From assembly GCA_001179505.1 (NCBI GenBank), contig CDMY01000221.1:62001-126000 (forward strand): a stretch of DNA of 64,000 nt, in the 5' to 3' direction. The first letter of the stretch is position 1, and each line of letters starts with the position of its first letter. Positions 22,384 to 27,019 of this stretch are shown here, in pieces. Source of the DNA: Vitrella brassicaformis CCMP3155 (lineage: Eukaryota; Protista; Chromerida). Under the pieces are notes generated by a model. That model worked only from the letters and a program-made list of their open reading frames with translations, searched no databases and had not been told where the DNA came from. Both the position numbers and the translations under genes were made by a program.

Positions 22384-24681
22384 CACATGAAGGTGGATGG
22401 ATGCCACGCGTGCGTGAGAGGGTAGGTGGATGTGTGGTTGTTTGCCTGCTCGTATGTCGTGCAGTTTGCGATTGAGTTTGTCCTGCTTCTTCTCGAGCTG
22501 ATCCTTGGCCTCCAACAACGACTGACGAGAGTTGAATAAATAGATGGATGGATGGATGGATGAGTGAATGGATGGGTAATTGAGTGGCAGGCTGACCTGG
22601 AGCTGTGTCTGTAGTTGTTTGTGTTCGTTGTCCTTTTTGTTGACGTCCTTCTCATGGCCCTTGAGCTTCTTCTGCTGACTTGACACCTCCTTCTCAGCCT
22701 CTACCTACTCACATACACACACACACACATCCACATGCACACACACAATGCACCATTACATCCTCCCGTGTTTTCCACTGACTGACCACGTCCTTCTTGG
22801 CGTTGTCGAGTTTGGTCTGCGCCCCCTCCATCTCCTGCACACACACACACACACACGAAGGCACGCACACAGACACATGAGGGCAGTGAATCGGCGGTCG
22901 GCATGTATAGATTCTTGCGTCGTACGGTGGTTCTCTTGGAGAGCAGCTCCTGCAGCCGCGTGAACTCGGCGTCCTCATTACGCTGCACGATCCCATAGAG
23001 GTACACAGGCACGCGTGCGTGAATGGCCTTTGTGCTTGCCGCCGTTTGTGTCGGTAACATACGGCCTTCATGCGTTTGTCGAACTCCTTCTTCTTGTCGG
23101 CCAACTCCTTCTGAAGCGACTCCATCTGAGCAGCGGAGAGATGAATGGATGGATGGATGGATATACACCACCCAACACATACATGGCCTCCACCGACCCA
23201 CACACCCATTTACCTGTGCGTCGAGCTCCTCCCTCTCCTTCACCAATTGGGCTGCACGCACACACATATGTGGAGATGCCGTGAAGAGAAAGTGTGTGTG
23301 TGTGTGTGTGGATTGCGTGGCTGACCGAGTTGCTGCTGTCCGCTCTTCTGCACGGTGAGGTGTTCGTAGTAGGTGATGGCGTTGACGAACCGCTGCTGCT
23401 GGTGGATGGTGCTGCGGATCTTCTCAAACTGCAAGTACTCCACCCTGATTGACCCATCCACACACACACACACACACACACAGACAGTGCGCACGTACTT
23501 GAATGTGTGTGTGCTCTCTGCGTACCTCTCCTTGTTGAGGCGGTCTCGCTCTGGTATGAACTCCTGCTCCAGCTTGTCGTCCACACGCGCCAGCTGCACT
23601 CACACACACACACAGAAGCAGACGATGCTCACACAAACAGACACCCTTCACTTGTTGAGGCGTGTGTAGCGGCTGGGGGACCGGCGGCAGGTCGCTGACC
23701 TCTTTTTCCTTGGCTTCGATTTTCTTTTTGGTGGTGTCCCTCTTGTTCTGGTACGTCTTGGTGCCCGCCGCCTCCTCGAGCATCTCCAGGAAGCGGTGCG
23801 GCCGGAACCCGATCGTCTGGGTGATCTTGCCCTGAATCATGCATGGTGCATGACGGACGAAGGACACACACACACACACAGAGAGAACGCGTCGGTCGGT
23901 ACGTGTGTGTTGGGTGTGGATCTGTTGTGTTGTGTTGGTTGGTTGAAGGTATCGTGCCTGTTGAATGAGGAAATACGGGTATTGTATGCTGAGCCCGGCG
24001 GCGGCGAAGAAGTCGTGGTAGGCCTTCTCCTTGACCACAGACCCGTTGATGAACCACTTGCGCTGACTCCCTTGCAGCTGATAAGACGGATGGACGGACG
24101 GACGGATGGATGGATGGATAGCAACACACACGGTCAGTGAGGCTGCTGTCCATACGAGCCTGTGTGTGTGTATGTGTGTTGCTCACGAGTCGCGTGCAGG
24201 TGATTTTGGGTTGCTGTCTGTATGGGTTTGTGACGGGCAGCGGACACCTTTCCTCGTCCTCATTGTTGAACACCAACGTCACCTGCATACAGACAGACAC
24301 ACAGACGGATGCGTTGATGACCATCCATCCACCCGTGCCCCTCGCTCGGCTCTGGTCAGCCACCTCGGCTTTGGTGATGCCCTGCTGGCCCTTGAGGTAT
24401 ATCAGCTCAGCCATGTCCTTGGCACGCATCTACAGCCAGCCAGCCACACAACACACAGCACAGTTTCGTTCGGCACCAATCGCTGTCCTCCTTCCTCTCC
24501 TTGGATGTCTGACGAGTTCGGGTTTATTGAGTCCGAGTGCGAATGAGGTGGCGTCGAGTATGTTGGACTTGCCGCTGCCGTTCTGGCCCGTGATGGCGTT
24601 GAACTGCGGATGCAGCCCGCAGATCTCAGTGCGGCCGCCATAAGACTTGAAGCCCTCCAAGATGATCCGCTCGATGTGCAT
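17546..24681 (-). CDS. SMC2: Structural maintenance of chromosomes protein 2 (condensin core subunit), many exons
   Basis: [16 protein letters not shown]...[17 protein letters not shown] (Walker A); YFLIQQGKI (Q-loop); coiled coils and hinge; [16 protein letters not shown]; [42 protein letters not shown], the SMC2-type C-terminus. Confidence 0.96.
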
Positions 24682-24815
24682 CGTCTGGGATGAATGCGAT
24701 CACGCAACAAGAGCGCCGGACGCTCAAAGGGGGAGCGAAGGGAATGTAAACGGCGTGGCGATTCTGCGAGCTTGGTGGATGGGAGGCAGAGCAAGAGACG
24801 GCTGCAACGAGCAAG

Positions 24816-27019
24816 ATGCCCGTCGCGCGAGCGCTGCAGATCAGGAAGACGTAGGATAGCACAGAAGTGGCCCATGCGGAGCACAAGGATGAATGAGTCT
24901 GCTCACACGTTTGTTTGTTTCATTGATTGCTTACATTGCTGGCAGGAGCTTTGAGTGGCTCACTCGTCGGATCTCCCTCGCCGGATATCTCTCACGCCGC
25001 GATGCAGAAGAGGCCGTCAAGAGCGGACAAGTCACGGTGAGCAGAAGAGATGCCCTGCAATACTATCGCCGGCACTGGTTTTGAGCTGGTTGTGTGTGCA
25101 GGTGGACGGTCAGGTGGTTCGTCAGAATGTGGAGGTGTGCGATGAGCATGAAGTCTTCTACAACGACCTCTATGTGCCGCCGCCCGGCGTGCCCAGGCTG
25201 TGGGGCATCAACAAACCAAAGAACGTCATCTGCACTTACGAGCACAAGAAGGTACGGTACATCCCCTCAACCAGGCGGCTCAGCTGACGTGTATTGTATG
25301 TATCATCACTGGCTGCATTAATGCGCCTCTCAGGACATCATGACGATATTTCAGCTCCTGCGAGAGATGGAGGAGCACTCCAAAACTGACACGTGGGCGT
25401 GCAGACAATGGAATCACACACAAGGGAAGGGCTTGCTGACGGTATGTGTGTACGTGTGTGTGGCTGTGTGCGTCAGTGGGTCAGGCTTCGATCTGCCGCC
25501 CCATCTCGTGCTCGTGGTACGTGCACATAACCAACCAAGCCAAGCATGCTGCTGTGGCCTGAGCACAGACATGGGATGTTGTTGTTGCTGTGTTTTTTTG
25601 TGCGTGTCAACCAACCGTGTATGTGTGCAGGGTCGTTTGCCGGTGAATGCGGAGGGTCTGATGCTCTTCACCAACGATGGCGACTTGGCCAAGAGGCTGC
25701 TCGACCCAAACAACAGAATACAGTCGGTACGCTTGTGTGCACCTACTTACTCACCGCCGTGTCTGGGATGGATGGATCTATGTGATGCCTGCCCTGCCCT
25801 GCCTGCGTGGGTGCCTGCGTCCGTCAGACATACATGGTGCGTGTCCACGGGCGGCTGCCCCCCGACAACCTCAGGAGCATATGGTAGGCTCAGCCGTCTC
25901 GGACGGAAACACTTGCCAAGTGTGTGTAACGGACGGGTGTGTGCGCGTAGGTCTGGTGTGACGGTCAACGGTGTGGACTACGGCCCTGTGTGGGTGGAGA
26001 TCCTACGCAGATGTTGGGCCAGCAGCTGGCTACGGGTGGGTAGGGCGGCTGGTACATGCCTGCCTGGGTGGATCGGGAGGGAGGGCACCATGGCACCACA
26101 CACACATACTCGCCGCTCGTCTCGTCTCCCTCACTCAGGTGCGGTTTGTCGAGACCCGCGACAGGTGCCTTCTCACACTGTTCCGCAAATTCGGCCTCGA
26201 GGTGGGAACGGATGGATGTATGGGCACGGAGTGGTCTCTGACTTGTGTGTGCAGGTGAAGCGTTATCGGCGTCACGCCTTTGGCCCCTACTTGGGCTCTG
26301 AGATCGAGGACGGCACTGTGCTGCAGTTCCCCATCCACAGAGCCATTCGGCATTTGGTTCCCCAGAGAGAGCGGCGGATGAGCATCGTCCCTGCTGCAGG
26401 CAGCCTGGTGGACACTCAGGGCGACGTCAGCTCTATCTTCGACGCTCCCCGCCTGTCGGCAGCACACCACCTTTATCTGTCCGACGACAATGACGAACCC
26501 CACCACCAACACCAACAACACCAGGGAGCCGACCGGGCCGCTGCTGGCGGCTGGACGTATGAGATTGTCGATGGGGAGGGCGGCCCGGCCGTGCCGACAG
26601 ATGAGATGGGAGGGGAGGTCATCGACGAAGGTGAAAACGATGTTATGAGTGCTGGAGATGGCGACTATGGCGAGAGGGAGTCGAGGGCCGCAAGTGTCAT
26701 GGGAAGCGATGAGCCGTCGGCCGCCGAGGTGTTCCACGTCTCTGCAGCTGGTGACAGTGAAGGCGATCCCTCAGTCTCAGCTGAGGATAACAGAGGTCTG
26801 CCGGGCAGCAGGCGAAATGCAGATGCAGCAGACACGATGAGAAAGCGGGAAAGCGATGTGACCACCAGGGGTCGCAAGAAGAAGCCGCCTGGTGGTAATG
26901 GTGTAGCTGTGGAGGTGCGTGAGAGTGTGGGTGTGGGGCTGCCACTGTACGTGCCGCCTGAGAGAAGGTCGGTGGCTCAGGCACTTGACGTGCTGACAAG
27001 ACAGGCAGGCAGGCCATGA
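24816..27019 (+). CDS. RsuA/RluB-family pseudouridine synthase-like protein with an S4 domain; catalytic Asp absent
   Basis: S4-like RRISLAGYLSRRDAEEAVKSGQVT|VDGQVV; INKPKNVICT; GRLPVNAEGLMLFTNDGDLAKRL; YMVRVHG; VTVNGVDYGP; long acidic C-tail. Confidence 0.9.

What the first reader, a model, noticed from the sequence alone, without database searches (positions are those of the whole stretch)
24816..27019. Pseudouridine synthase-like protein with the catalytic aspartate replaced by proline (GRLP)
Seen: codons GGT CGT TTG CCG GTG AAT GCG GAG GGT at 25631-25657 give GRLPVNAEG where RsuA/RluB enzymes have GRLDxxxEG. CCG differs from an Asp codon at all three positions, so a single sequencing error is unlikely. 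The EGRNR-like motif is also degenerate (ETRDR). S4, KP and LFTNDG are retained and the frame is intact. Established: this Asp is essential for isomerisation, and some pseudouridine-synthase folds act non-catalytically in organellar ribosome assembly. Inference: a pseudo-enzyme acting as an RNA chaperone or ribosome assembly factor.
Basis: partly seen in the sequence, partly recalled or inferred. Interest (0 to 1): 0.7.

Follow-up and report, generated by a model that had tools for sequence, protein, structure and literature searches.

The report
Dead RluB-type pseudouridine synthase family
This Vitrella gene encodes a look-alike of the bacterial rRNA enzyme RluB that has lost its whole active site but kept its RNA-binding shape. 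The same dead protein is conserved from malaria parasites to dinoflagellates, so it is an old, unstudied pseudo-enzyme, probably used in building the mitochondrial ribosome.

Summary
The window is from Vitrella brassicaformis. The gene at 24816-27019 (+) has 10 GT-AG exons and encodes a 479-residue S4 + RsuA/RluB-fold protein. Where RluB has its catalytic GRLD, this protein reads GRLP (CCG at 25640-25642).

This is not an error or a local decay. A profile search of 1.84 billion proteins found a monophyletic clade (100/100 support) with members in Chromera, Plasmodium, Hepatocystis, Eimeria, Cystoisospora, Cardiosporidium, Rhytidocystis, Digyalum, Symbiodinium and Amoebophrya. In this clade:
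- the Asp is replaced (mostly by Pro, Ser, Asn, Ala or Gly);
- the other residues that are invariant in active enzymes are also gone (motif I, the Arg of GRLD, motif III);
- the S4 domain, the KP, EGLxLLTNDG and FGPY motifs, the fold (pLDDT 95.9) and the net positive charge are kept.

So it is a myzozoan-wide pseudo-enzyme.

The function is inferred, not shown. The most likely role is a non-catalytic RNA binder in mitochondrial large-subunit ribosome biogenesis. The probable Toxoplasma orthologue is fitness-conferring and modestly enriched in a uL4m pull-down, and plastid-less Amoebophrya keeps the protein. However, no orthologue has an N-terminal targeting peptide, so a nuclear or cytosolic role remains a serious rival.

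I found no paper on this family. The scan has not noted it on other DNA.

The parts
24682..24815 (.). 134-bp divergent intergenic region between the start codon of an SMC-type gene (minus strand) and the start codon of the dead-PUS gene. Presumed shared promoter.
   Evidence: Sequence. The minus-strand ORF 24430-24681 hits SMC_N at 4.5e-18. Promoter function was not tested.
24816..24850 (+). Exon 1: start codon and the clade-specific N-terminal extension (MPVARALQIRKT, last codon split).
   Evidence: The exon model reproduces P0001 exactly. The N-terminus is conserved in Eimeria, Cystoisospora, Rhytidocystis and Plasmodium.
24946..25036 (+). Exon 2: first half of the S4 RNA-binding domain.
25102..25251 (+). 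Exon 3: rest of S4 and the first strand of the catalytic-type domain, with the conserved KP motif (K80-P81).
25334..25392 (+). Exon 4: helix corresponding to motif I. The Asp and Arg that are invariant in active enzymes are absent here.
25477..25516 (+). Exon 5: variable loop and the strand leading into the former active site (clade-specific His121).
   Evidence: The 84-bp intron before it lies in a loop of variable length, so this splice is the least certain one.
25631..25726 (+). Exon 6: GRLPVNAEGLMLFTNDG. Pro129 (CCG 25640-25642) replaces the catalytic Asp.
25828..25883 (+). Exon 7: motif IIa strand. Tyr159 is retained. The preceding Arg/Lys of active enzymes is Ser in Vitrella (Thr in 20 of 25 clade members).
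25951..26035 (+). Exon 8: beta-hairpin region (YGPVWVEILRR...SWLR).
26139..26201 (+). Exon 9: degenerate motif III (VETRDRCLLTLF in place of EGKNREIRR).
26255..27019 (+). Exon 10: last strands of the fold (KRYRRHAFGPY), then about 215 residues of a lineage-specific acidic-then-basic low-complexity tail, and the stop codon.
   Evidence: The tail is absent from the roughly 280-residue orthologues.

Best explanation
The gene encodes a non-catalytic descendant of the bacterial-type 23S rRNA pseudouridine synthase RluB (RsuA family). In the common ancestor of Myzozoa (apicomplexans, chromerids, dinoflagellates) the active site was dismantled. The catalytic Asp, the Arg next to it, motif I and motif III were all lost. 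The S4 domain, the PUS fold and the basic RNA-binding surface stayed under selection, and new clade-specific residues became fixed. The protein therefore binds RNA without isomerising uridine. Its most likely job is to hold or chaperone a piece of mitochondrial large-subunit rRNA during mitoribosome assembly, as a transient factor and not a component of the finished ribosome. Shown: loss of the catalytic residues, their conservation pattern, the fold, and the taxonomic range. Inferred: RNA binding, mitochondrial location, and the assembly role.
For: Loss of the active site:
- GRLP aligns with GRLD of RluB.
- 21 of the 148 profile hits scanned (P0089-P0236), plus the query proteins, lack GRLD; the other 127 have it.
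- The Asp-less proteins form one clade with 100/100 support.
- Named members are Vitrella, Chromera, Plasmodium spp., Hepatocystis, Eimeria, Cystoisospora, Cardiosporidium, Rhytidocystis, Digyalum, Symbiodinium and Amoebophrya.
- Positions fully or nearly invariant in 25 active proteins (D90, R94, G126, R127, D129, R/K157, G210, K/R211, N212, E214, R216) are kept in 0-24% of clade members.

What is retained:
- K80-P81, G134, L137, T139, G178 and G235-P236, and S4 positions G39 and V41, are kept in at least 88% (R29 in 80%).
- Q8, L23, H121, F144, T157 and L218 are conserved in the clade only.
- The AlphaFold model has pLDDT 95.9. Its best structural matches are the RluB-RNA complex (TM 0.74/0.80), RluF-RNA, and RluB on a pre-50S particle.
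- Core net charge is +11.6 in the clade against +12.0 in active proteins.

Links to the mitochondrion:
- In the unrooted tree the clade joins at the node between a eukaryotic group with presequence-like N-termini (Tetrahymena and others) and the 52 remaining, mostly bacterial or unnamed, sequences.
- Amoebophrya has no plastid but keeps 31 mitoribosomal proteins (PMC7789003).
- The Laverania orthologue lies next to MSP9/ABRA, so it is PF3D7_1228500. A published table pairs PF3D7_1228500 with TGME49_210230.
- TGGT1_210230 has a CRISPR score of -3.37. In uL4m-FLAG pull-downs it shows log2FC 2.48 (p 0.39) and 3.99 (p 0.043), and it is listed among the significantly enriched proteins (PMC11652630 Supplementary Data 5).
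Against: - No orthologue has an N-terminal extension that could be a cleavable presequence. All start 10-15 residues before the S4 helix with a conserved sequence.
- TGGT1_210230 has blank mitochondrial-proteome and hyperLOPIT fields.
- PF3D7_1228500 ranks 658 in a Plasmodium mitochondrial ranking, which is no positive evidence.
- The pull-down enrichment is far below that of true mitoribosomal proteins (log2FC 7-8), and the same list holds cytosolic ribosomal proteins.
- The link from Vitrella to TGGT1_210230 rests on a chain of two orthology steps that I could not check by sequence.
- The protein is absent from the solved Toxoplasma mitoribosome.
- The acidic-plus-basic tails of the Vitrella protein and of P0002 resemble nucleolar proteins.
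- The tree's root is unknown, and the clade sits on a long branch (1.3 changes per site).
Confidence: 0.5

Rival explanations
1. The dead RluB-like protein works outside the organelles, as a nuclear/nucleolar or cytosolic RNA-binding protein, for instance in cytosolic ribosome biogenesis or mRNA handling.
For: No targeting peptide in any orthologue, and the very N-terminus itself is conserved. There is no hyperLOPIT or mitochondrial-proteome assignment for the probable Toxoplasma orthologue. The C-terminal tails of the Vitrella and P0002 proteins are acidic, then lysine/arginine-rich, as in many nucleolar factors. The weak uL4m enrichment could be background, since 40S proteins are in the same list.
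Against: RsuA-family proteins are otherwise bacterial or organellar. The nearest eukaryotic relatives carry presequence-like leaders. The tails are lineage-specific and missing from the roughly 280-residue orthologues. Enrichment with an LSU mitoribosomal bait was seen in both replicates.
Confidence: 0.25
2. It serves the plastid (apicoplast) ribosome or plastid RNA.
For: The Myzozoa share a red-algal plastid, and plant RluB-like proteins act in chloroplast rRNA maturation (my own knowledge, not checked here).
Against: Amoebophrya, which has lost the plastid, keeps a clade member. None of the orthologues has a signal peptide plus transit peptide. Vitrella has a separate, canonical GRLD-bearing RsuA-family gene whose roughly 200-residue leader includes a hydrophobic segment (G000:C305, L025).
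Confidence: 0.06
3. The protein is still a pseudouridine synthase that uses another acidic residue.
For: A few haemosporidian members read NSLD at the motif (P0103, P0243, P0248). Tyr159 is kept in 72% of members.
Against: Every known PUS family needs this Asp (cited in the preprint 10.1101/2023.02.23.529727). The clade also lacks the neighbouring Gly-Arg, motif I and motif III. No clade-wide acidic residue replaces the Asp.
Confidence: 0.04
4. It is an annotation or assembly artefact, or a decaying pseudogene in Vitrella.
For: No read-level check was possible.
Against: The 479-codon frame is intact and all nine introns are GT-AG. The alignment with intronless orthologues is continuous across the exon junctions. 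The same substitution occurs in independent genomes. Clade-specific residues are conserved.
Confidence: 0.02

Closest known systems
E. coli RluB (23S rRNA pseudouridine-2605 synthase, RsuA family; PDB 4lab, 4lgt, 9cl9)
   Same: S4 domain plus the same catalytic-type fold. It is the best sequence match (E 8.7e-18) and the best structural match (TM 0.74/0.80). The KP, EGLLLLTNDG and G-P motifs and the basic charge are shared. RluB itself is seen bound to a pre-50S particle.
   Different: The catalytic Asp is Pro. The Arg of GRLD is lost in most of the clade. Motif I (D..GR.T) and motif III (EGKNRE.R) are lost. There is an extra conserved N-terminal 13-mer. Scores are below the NCBIfam cut-offs (69.9 against 290 bits).
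Human RPUSD3 (mitochondrial RluA-family protein with RASG in place of HRLD)
   Same: A PUS paralogue without the catalytic Asp that is nevertheless needed for mitochondrial gene expression (as described in 10.1101/2023.02.23.529727).
   Different: A different PUS family (RluA, no RluB-type S4 architecture) and a different lineage, so an independent loss. RPUSD3 is known to be mitochondrial. The location of this protein is unknown.
Trypanosoma brucei mt-LAF3 (RluA-type factor in mitoribosomal LSU assembly intermediates, PDB 6yxx/6yxy)
   Same: A PUS fold used as a large-subunit assembly factor for a mitoribosome with unusual rRNA. Catalysis is dispensable, since the D211A mutant rescues.
   Different: mt-LAF3 keeps its Asp and belongs to the RluA family. 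It is only a weak structural match here (rank 46, TM 0.37). Its place on the pre-ribosome is solved. Nothing of the kind exists for the myzozoan protein.
Leader-bearing eukaryotic RluB-like proteins (e.g. Tetrahymena utriculariae KAL4499239.1)
   Same: The nearest eukaryotic relatives in the tree. They join the dead clade at one node.
   Different: They keep GRLD and motif III, and they carry long N-terminal leaders that look like mitochondrial presequences.

Membership tests
RsuA/RluB family of pseudouridine synthases (PF00849 + PF01479; TIGR00093) | N-terminal S4 RNA-binding domain | tested here: met
   PF01479 E 1.1e-5, 25.5 bits against a cut-off of 22.8. S4 positions G39 and V41 are kept in at least 88% of the clade and R29 in 80%.
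RsuA/RluB family of pseudouridine synthases (PF00849 + PF01479; TIGR00093) | Pseudouridine synthase core fold | tested here: met
   PF00849 E 4.3e-11, 43.7 bits against a cut-off of 26.8. AlphaFold model pLDDT 95.9. Foldseek match to 4lgt E 5.8e-20, TM 0.74/0.80.
RsuA/RluB family of pseudouridine synthases (PF00849 + PF01479; TIGR00093) | Catalytic Asp in the GRLD motif | tested here: not met
   Pro129 (CCG 25640-25642) aligns with the Asp of RluB. Asp is present in 25 of 25 active relatives and in 2 of 25 clade members.
RsuA/RluB family of pseudouridine synthases (PF00849 + PF01479; TIGR00093) | Motif I (D..GR.T) and motif III (EG[KR]NRE.R) residues around the active site | tested here: not met
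   D90, R94, G210, K211, N212, E214 and R216 are kept in only 0-20% of the clade. Vitrella reads ETRDRCL at motif III.
RsuA/RluB family of pseudouridine synthases (PF00849 + PF01479; TIGR00093) | Score above the curated NCBIfam cut-offs (subfamily, or RluB equivalog) | tested here: not met
   TIGR00093 scores 77.4 bits against a cut-off of 109.3. The RluB equivalog scores 69.9 against 290.
RsuA/RluB family of pseudouridine synthases (PF00849 + PF01479; TIGR00093) | Uridine-to-pseudouridine isomerase activity | not testable with these tools
   Needs an in vitro assay or pseudouridine mapping after depletion.
Non-catalytic PUS paralogues in organellar RNA/ribosome biogenesis (RPUSD3, mt-LAF3 type) | Catalytic residues lost or dispensable while the protein stays under selection | tested here: met
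   Clade-wide loss together with conserved clade-specific residues and an intact fold. The probable Toxoplasma orthologue has fitness score -3.37.
Non-catalytic PUS paralogues in organellar RNA/ribosome biogenesis (RPUSD3, mt-LAF3 type) | Mitochondrial location | tested here: inconclusive
   No presequence. LOPIT and mitochondrial-proteome fields are blank. Presence in plastid-less Amoebophrya argues against a plastid role only.
Non-catalytic PUS paralogues in organellar RNA/ribosome biogenesis (RPUSD3, mt-LAF3 type) | Physical association with (pre-)mitoribosomal particles | tested here: inconclusive
   TGGT1_210230 in uL4m-FLAG pull-downs shows log2FC 2.48 (p 0.39) and 3.99 (p 0.043). The orthology comes from a published table and was not checked by sequence.
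Structural proteins of the mature apicomplexan mitoribosome | Modelled in the Toxoplasma mitoribosome structures | tested here: not met
   No Toxoplasma chain appears among the PDB sequence matches of P0001 or of the Cystoisospora orthologue. Neither structure paper mentions a pseudouridine synthase. TGGT1_210230 is absent from the mitoribosomal protein table (file 9).

The most novel reading that the evidence does not exclude
When the myzozoan mitochondrial rRNAs broke into dozens of fragments, the ancestral mitochondrial RluB stopped modifying its target. It was retooled into an essential, non-catalytic clamp that recognises and positions the domain V (peptidyl-transferase-centre) fragment during large-subunit assembly. 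It would be the first experimentally tractable assembly factor of the apicomplexan mitoribosome, and it is absent from animal hosts.
Probability: 0.3. Interest if true: 0.72.

Novelty: new variant of a known kind. Interest (0 to 1): 0.55.

Why it matters
Pseudouridine synthase look-alikes that work without catalysis are known from the RluA family (human RPUSD3, trypanosome mt-LAF3). An RsuA/RluB-family clade whose whole active site has been removed, and which is conserved across apicomplexans, chromerids and dinoflagellates, has not been described in the literature I could search.

Databases call its Plasmodium members 'RNA pseudouridylate synthase, putative', which is probably wrong as an enzyme name.

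A 2026 review states that apicomplexan mitoribosome biogenesis has not been studied experimentally (PMC12885271). This protein is a concrete candidate:
- it appears fitness-conferring in Toxoplasma;
- animals lack the RsuA family (my own knowledge, not checked here);
- it can be tested by tagging, depletion and RNA cross-linking.

It is also a clean case for studying how an RNA-modifying enzyme becomes a pure RNA-binding protein.

Tried and rejected
1. Alternative start codon at 24893, read without the first intron, which would give a hydrophobic N-terminus. I raised this because an AT-rich orthologue locus has a similar upstream ORF (L022). I rejected it because the annotated N-terminus (M..AR.LQL.KT.FEW) is conserved in Eimeria, Cystoisospora, Rhytidocystis and Plasmodium.

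2. My first exon 4, without the 84-bp intron. The annotated splice 25392/25477 is canonical and reproduces P0001. The loop varies in length among orthologues, so this remains the least certain junction.

3. The 'WPP family fused to an rRNA pseudouridylate synthase' lead (PMC8550323). No WPP motif occurs in the 13.5-kb Laverania locus. The gene next to the WPP gene is the paralogue PF3D7_1227900, not the dead one.

5. The word-based search with the intron-containing ORF found only the protein itself. The third word search was swamped by Plasmodium words.

6. Searches for the probable Toxoplasma or Plasmodium gene ids in paper texts and in three further supplement sets gave nothing.

7. Joined spliced model. 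I sent no self-joined model to any search tool. The first family scan was done ORF by ORF, by reference. All later searches used the database's own stored protein P0001. Exons were joined only inside scripts, to check that they reproduce P0001.
Full report
**What is in the sequence**

The window is from Vitrella brassicaformis CCMP3155. The ORF-by-reference search returned the public protein P0001 (479 aa, 'RNA-binding S4 domain-containing').

Ten exons, all with GT-AG introns, reproduce P0001 exactly:
- 24816-24850
- 24946-25036
- 25102-25251
- 25334-25392
- 25477-25516
- 25631-25726
- 25828-25883
- 25951-26035
- 26139-26201
- 26255-27019

Exon 6 opens with GGT CGT TTG CCG GTG AAT GCG GAG GGT, which gives GRLPVNAEG. 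Pfam finds S4 (E 1.1e-5) and PseudoU_synth_2 (E 4.3e-11), both above their cut-offs. NCBIfam places the protein nearest the RsuA/RluB/RluE/RluF subfamily and the RluB equivalog, but far below their cut-offs.

The best solved relative is E. coli RluB (4lab, E 8.7e-18). In that alignment VGRLPVNAEGLMLFTNDG lies over VGRLDVNTCGLLLFTTDG, and VETRDR lies over TEGRNR. No frame of the gene region offers a hidden GRLD exon. A self-joined spliced model was never sent to a search tool. Searches used references or the stored protein P0001.

**Is the loss real and old?**

The word search with residues 1-262 found two close relatives that also lack the Asp. P0002 reads SGLN and P0003 reads NRVP. Ordinary bacterial RluB followed at about 30% identity.

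A profile of the three sequences was then run against 1.84 billion representatives. I scanned hits P0089-P0236 for the motif. Of these 148, 21 lack G[RK]LD and 127 have it.

Source names place the Asp-less proteins in these organisms:
- Chromera velia (Cvel_12268)
- several Plasmodium species and Hepatocystis, annotated 'RNA pseudouridylate synthase, putative' or 'conserved protein, unknown function'
- Eimeria flavescens
- Cystoisospora suis
- Cardiosporidium cionae
- Rhytidocystis pertsovi
- Digyalum oweni
- Symbiodinium natans
- Amoebophrya sp. A25
- unnamed marine metagenome and transcriptome contigs

The ESM Atlas holds the family as one all-eukaryotic cluster of 57 members, most commonly apicomplexan.

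In a maximum-likelihood tree of 84 sequences the 25 Asp-less proteins form one clade with 100/100 support on a long stem. Seven eukaryotic GRLD-bearing proteins form a second group (99/91). Two of them, Tetrahymena P0104 and the MMETSP protist P0136, have presequence-like N-termini. The 52 remaining sequences, mostly bacterial or unnamed, form a third group (96/91). The three groups meet at one node. If the root lies among the bacteria, the dead clade is sister to the leader-bearing eukaryotic RluB-like proteins. The root was not tested and the stem is long.

**What was lost and what was kept**

I compared 25 clade members with 25 active relatives, column by column.

Positions fully or nearly invariant in the active set, and kept by only 0-24% of the clade:
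- D90 and R94 (motif I)
- G126, R127 and D129 (GRLD)
- the basic residue before Tyr159
- G210, K/R211, N212, E214 and R216 (motif III)

At position 129 the clade has Pro (11 members), Ser, Ala, Asn, Gly or Lys. It has Asp in only two haemosporidian-type sequences, and these lack the neighbouring Gly-Arg.

Features retained in at least 88% of the clade, except where noted:
- S4 positions G39 and V41 (R29 in 80%)
- K80-P81
- G134, L137 and T139 (D141 and G142 in 80%)
- G178
- G235-P236, followed by Y237, which the clade conserves (88%) where active proteins mostly have Phe

The basic character at positions 19, 162 and 228 is kept in 84-100% of members. Q8, L23, H121, F144, T157 and L218 are conserved only within the clade.

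Mean pairwise identity is 33% within the clade, 42% among the active proteins and 26% between the two sets. The core net charge is +11.6 against +12.0.

An AlphaFold2 model of residues 1-268 is very confident (pLDDT 95.9, pTM 0.88). Its best structural matches are the RluB-RNA complex 4lgt (TM 0.74/0.80), RluF-RNA 3dh3, and RluB bound to an E. coli pre-50S intermediate, 9cl9.

The picture is a protein that has kept its shape and its RNA-binding surface, has discarded the chemistry, and has acquired new constraints. That is a pseudo-enzyme under purifying selection, not a decaying gene.

**Where and how it might work**

This part is inference.

Points in favour of a mitochondrial large-subunit role:
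- It descends from an enzyme that acts on domain V of 23S rRNA. That enzyme is itself seen on immature 50S particles.
- The clade's range coincides with the Myzozoa. Their mitochondrial rRNAs are highly fragmented (stated in PMC11652630, PMC11742926 and PMC7789003).
- The protein is retained in Amoebophrya, which has lost its plastid but expresses 31 mitoribosomal proteins.
- Vitrella has a second, canonical RsuA-family gene with GRLD, motif III and a roughly 200-residue leader. This gene could cover any plastid need (G000:C305).

There is also one experimental hint, reached through two orthology steps:
1. In a Laverania chromosome-12-sized contig the dead gene lies convergent with a gene that carries the VNDEED repeats and KE-rich tail of ABRA/MSP9 (recognition of ABRA is from my own knowledge).
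2. MSP9 is PF3D7_1228600 (PMC3444787), so the dead gene is PF3D7_1228500.
3. The supplement of PMC8550323 lists PF3D7_1228500 as 'RNA pseudouridylate synthase, putative', with orthologue TGME49_210230.

In Supplementary Data 5 of PMC11652630, TGGT1_210230 is a 'hypothetical protein' with CRISPR phenotype score -3.37. In uL4m-FLAG pull-downs it shows log2FC 2.48 (p 0.39) and 3.99 (p 0.043), and it appears on a sheet of significantly enriched proteins.

Points against:
- Every orthologue begins only 10-15 residues before the S4 helix, with a conserved sequence, so none has a cleavable presequence.
- The mitochondrial-proteome and hyperLOPIT columns for TGGT1_210230 are blank.
- The Plasmodium ranking gives no positive evidence (rank 658).
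- The enrichment is far below that of true mitoribosomal proteins, and cytosolic ribosomal proteins share the list.
- The protein is absent from the solved mitoribosomes.
- The Vitrella and P0002 tails look nucleolar.

I therefore give about 0.5 to a transient mitochondrial LSU biogenesis role, 0.25 to a nuclear or cytosolic RNA-binding role, and small weights to a plastid role, residual catalysis, or artefact.

**Comparison with what is known**

The protein works like human RPUSD3 and T. brucei mt-LAF3. Both are RluA-family proteins needed for mitochondrial gene expression without, or independently of, catalysis (10.1101/2023.02.23.529727). It is not a member of that family.

By fold and ancestry it belongs to the RsuA/RluB family. 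It fails that family's defining catalytic features and its curated score thresholds, so it should not be named a synthase.

I found no paper naming PF3D7_1228500 or TGME49_210230, and none describing an Asp-less RsuA-type clade in these organisms. A 2026 review states that apicomplexan mitoribosome biogenesis has not been studied experimentally (PMC12885271).

Earlier notes of this scan cover other pseudouridine synthase genes of Vitrella, all of RluA type and including one dead one. They do not cover this family.

**Limits**

- The taxonomic list rests on the few proteins that carry names.
- Absence from Cryptosporidium, piroplasms or Perkinsus cannot be claimed, because only the best 150 profile hits were visible.
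- The Toxoplasma link was not verified by sequence.

Noticed in passing
window 24430-24681 (-): First exon of an SMC-type ATPase gene (SMC_N, E 4.5e-18). It lies head-to-head with the dead-PUS gene, and the two start codons are only 134 bp apart, which suggests a bidirectional promoter.
   Followed up: partly
G000:C305:~367000-369000 (L025:119-2071): Vitrella's only other RsuA-family locus. It is a canonical gene with S4, GRLD and EGRNRQLRR, preceded by a roughly 200-residue leader with a hydrophobic segment. It is a likely organelle-targeted active RluB-type enzyme.
   Followed up: partly
L022:7794-9083: The closest orthologue (49% identity, motif SGLN) sits on an AT-rich, nearly intron-free 17-kb contig from an unnamed organism (Logan SRR22729506). 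The called protein lacks its S4 domain, which lies in an upstream ORF separated by a short intron. The organism was not identified.
   Followed up: no
P0103, P0243, P0248 (haemosporidian-type orthologues): Some Plasmodium-like and Hepatocystis members read NSLD, with an Asp back at the catalytic position but without the Gly-Arg or motif III. Other Plasmodium species read NSLS or NSLN. This may be a reversion without function.
   Followed up: no
window 25340-27019 (+), frame 2: A single 559-codon ORF stays open across six introns and the out-of-frame exons 7-8. It is probably a by-product of the GC-rich, GT-repeat-rich introns, but it misleads ORF-based gene calling.
   Followed up: no
PMC11652630 Supplementary Data 4 (Toxoplasma): Another protein, TGGT1_214210 'rRNA pseudouridine synthase' (fitness score -4.3), is enriched in the mtAP2-1 pull-down (log2FC 3.1, p 0.003). 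So at least one further PUS-type protein associates with Toxoplasma mitoribosomal particles.
   Followed up: no
P. falciparum paralogues listed in the PMC8550323 supplement: Plasmodium has three mutually closest RsuA-like paralogues (PF3D7_0219500, PF3D7_1227900, PF3D7_1228500). PF3D7_1227900 neighbours a mitochondrial 'WPP family' gene and is predicted to be fused to it in piroplasms.
   Followed up: partly
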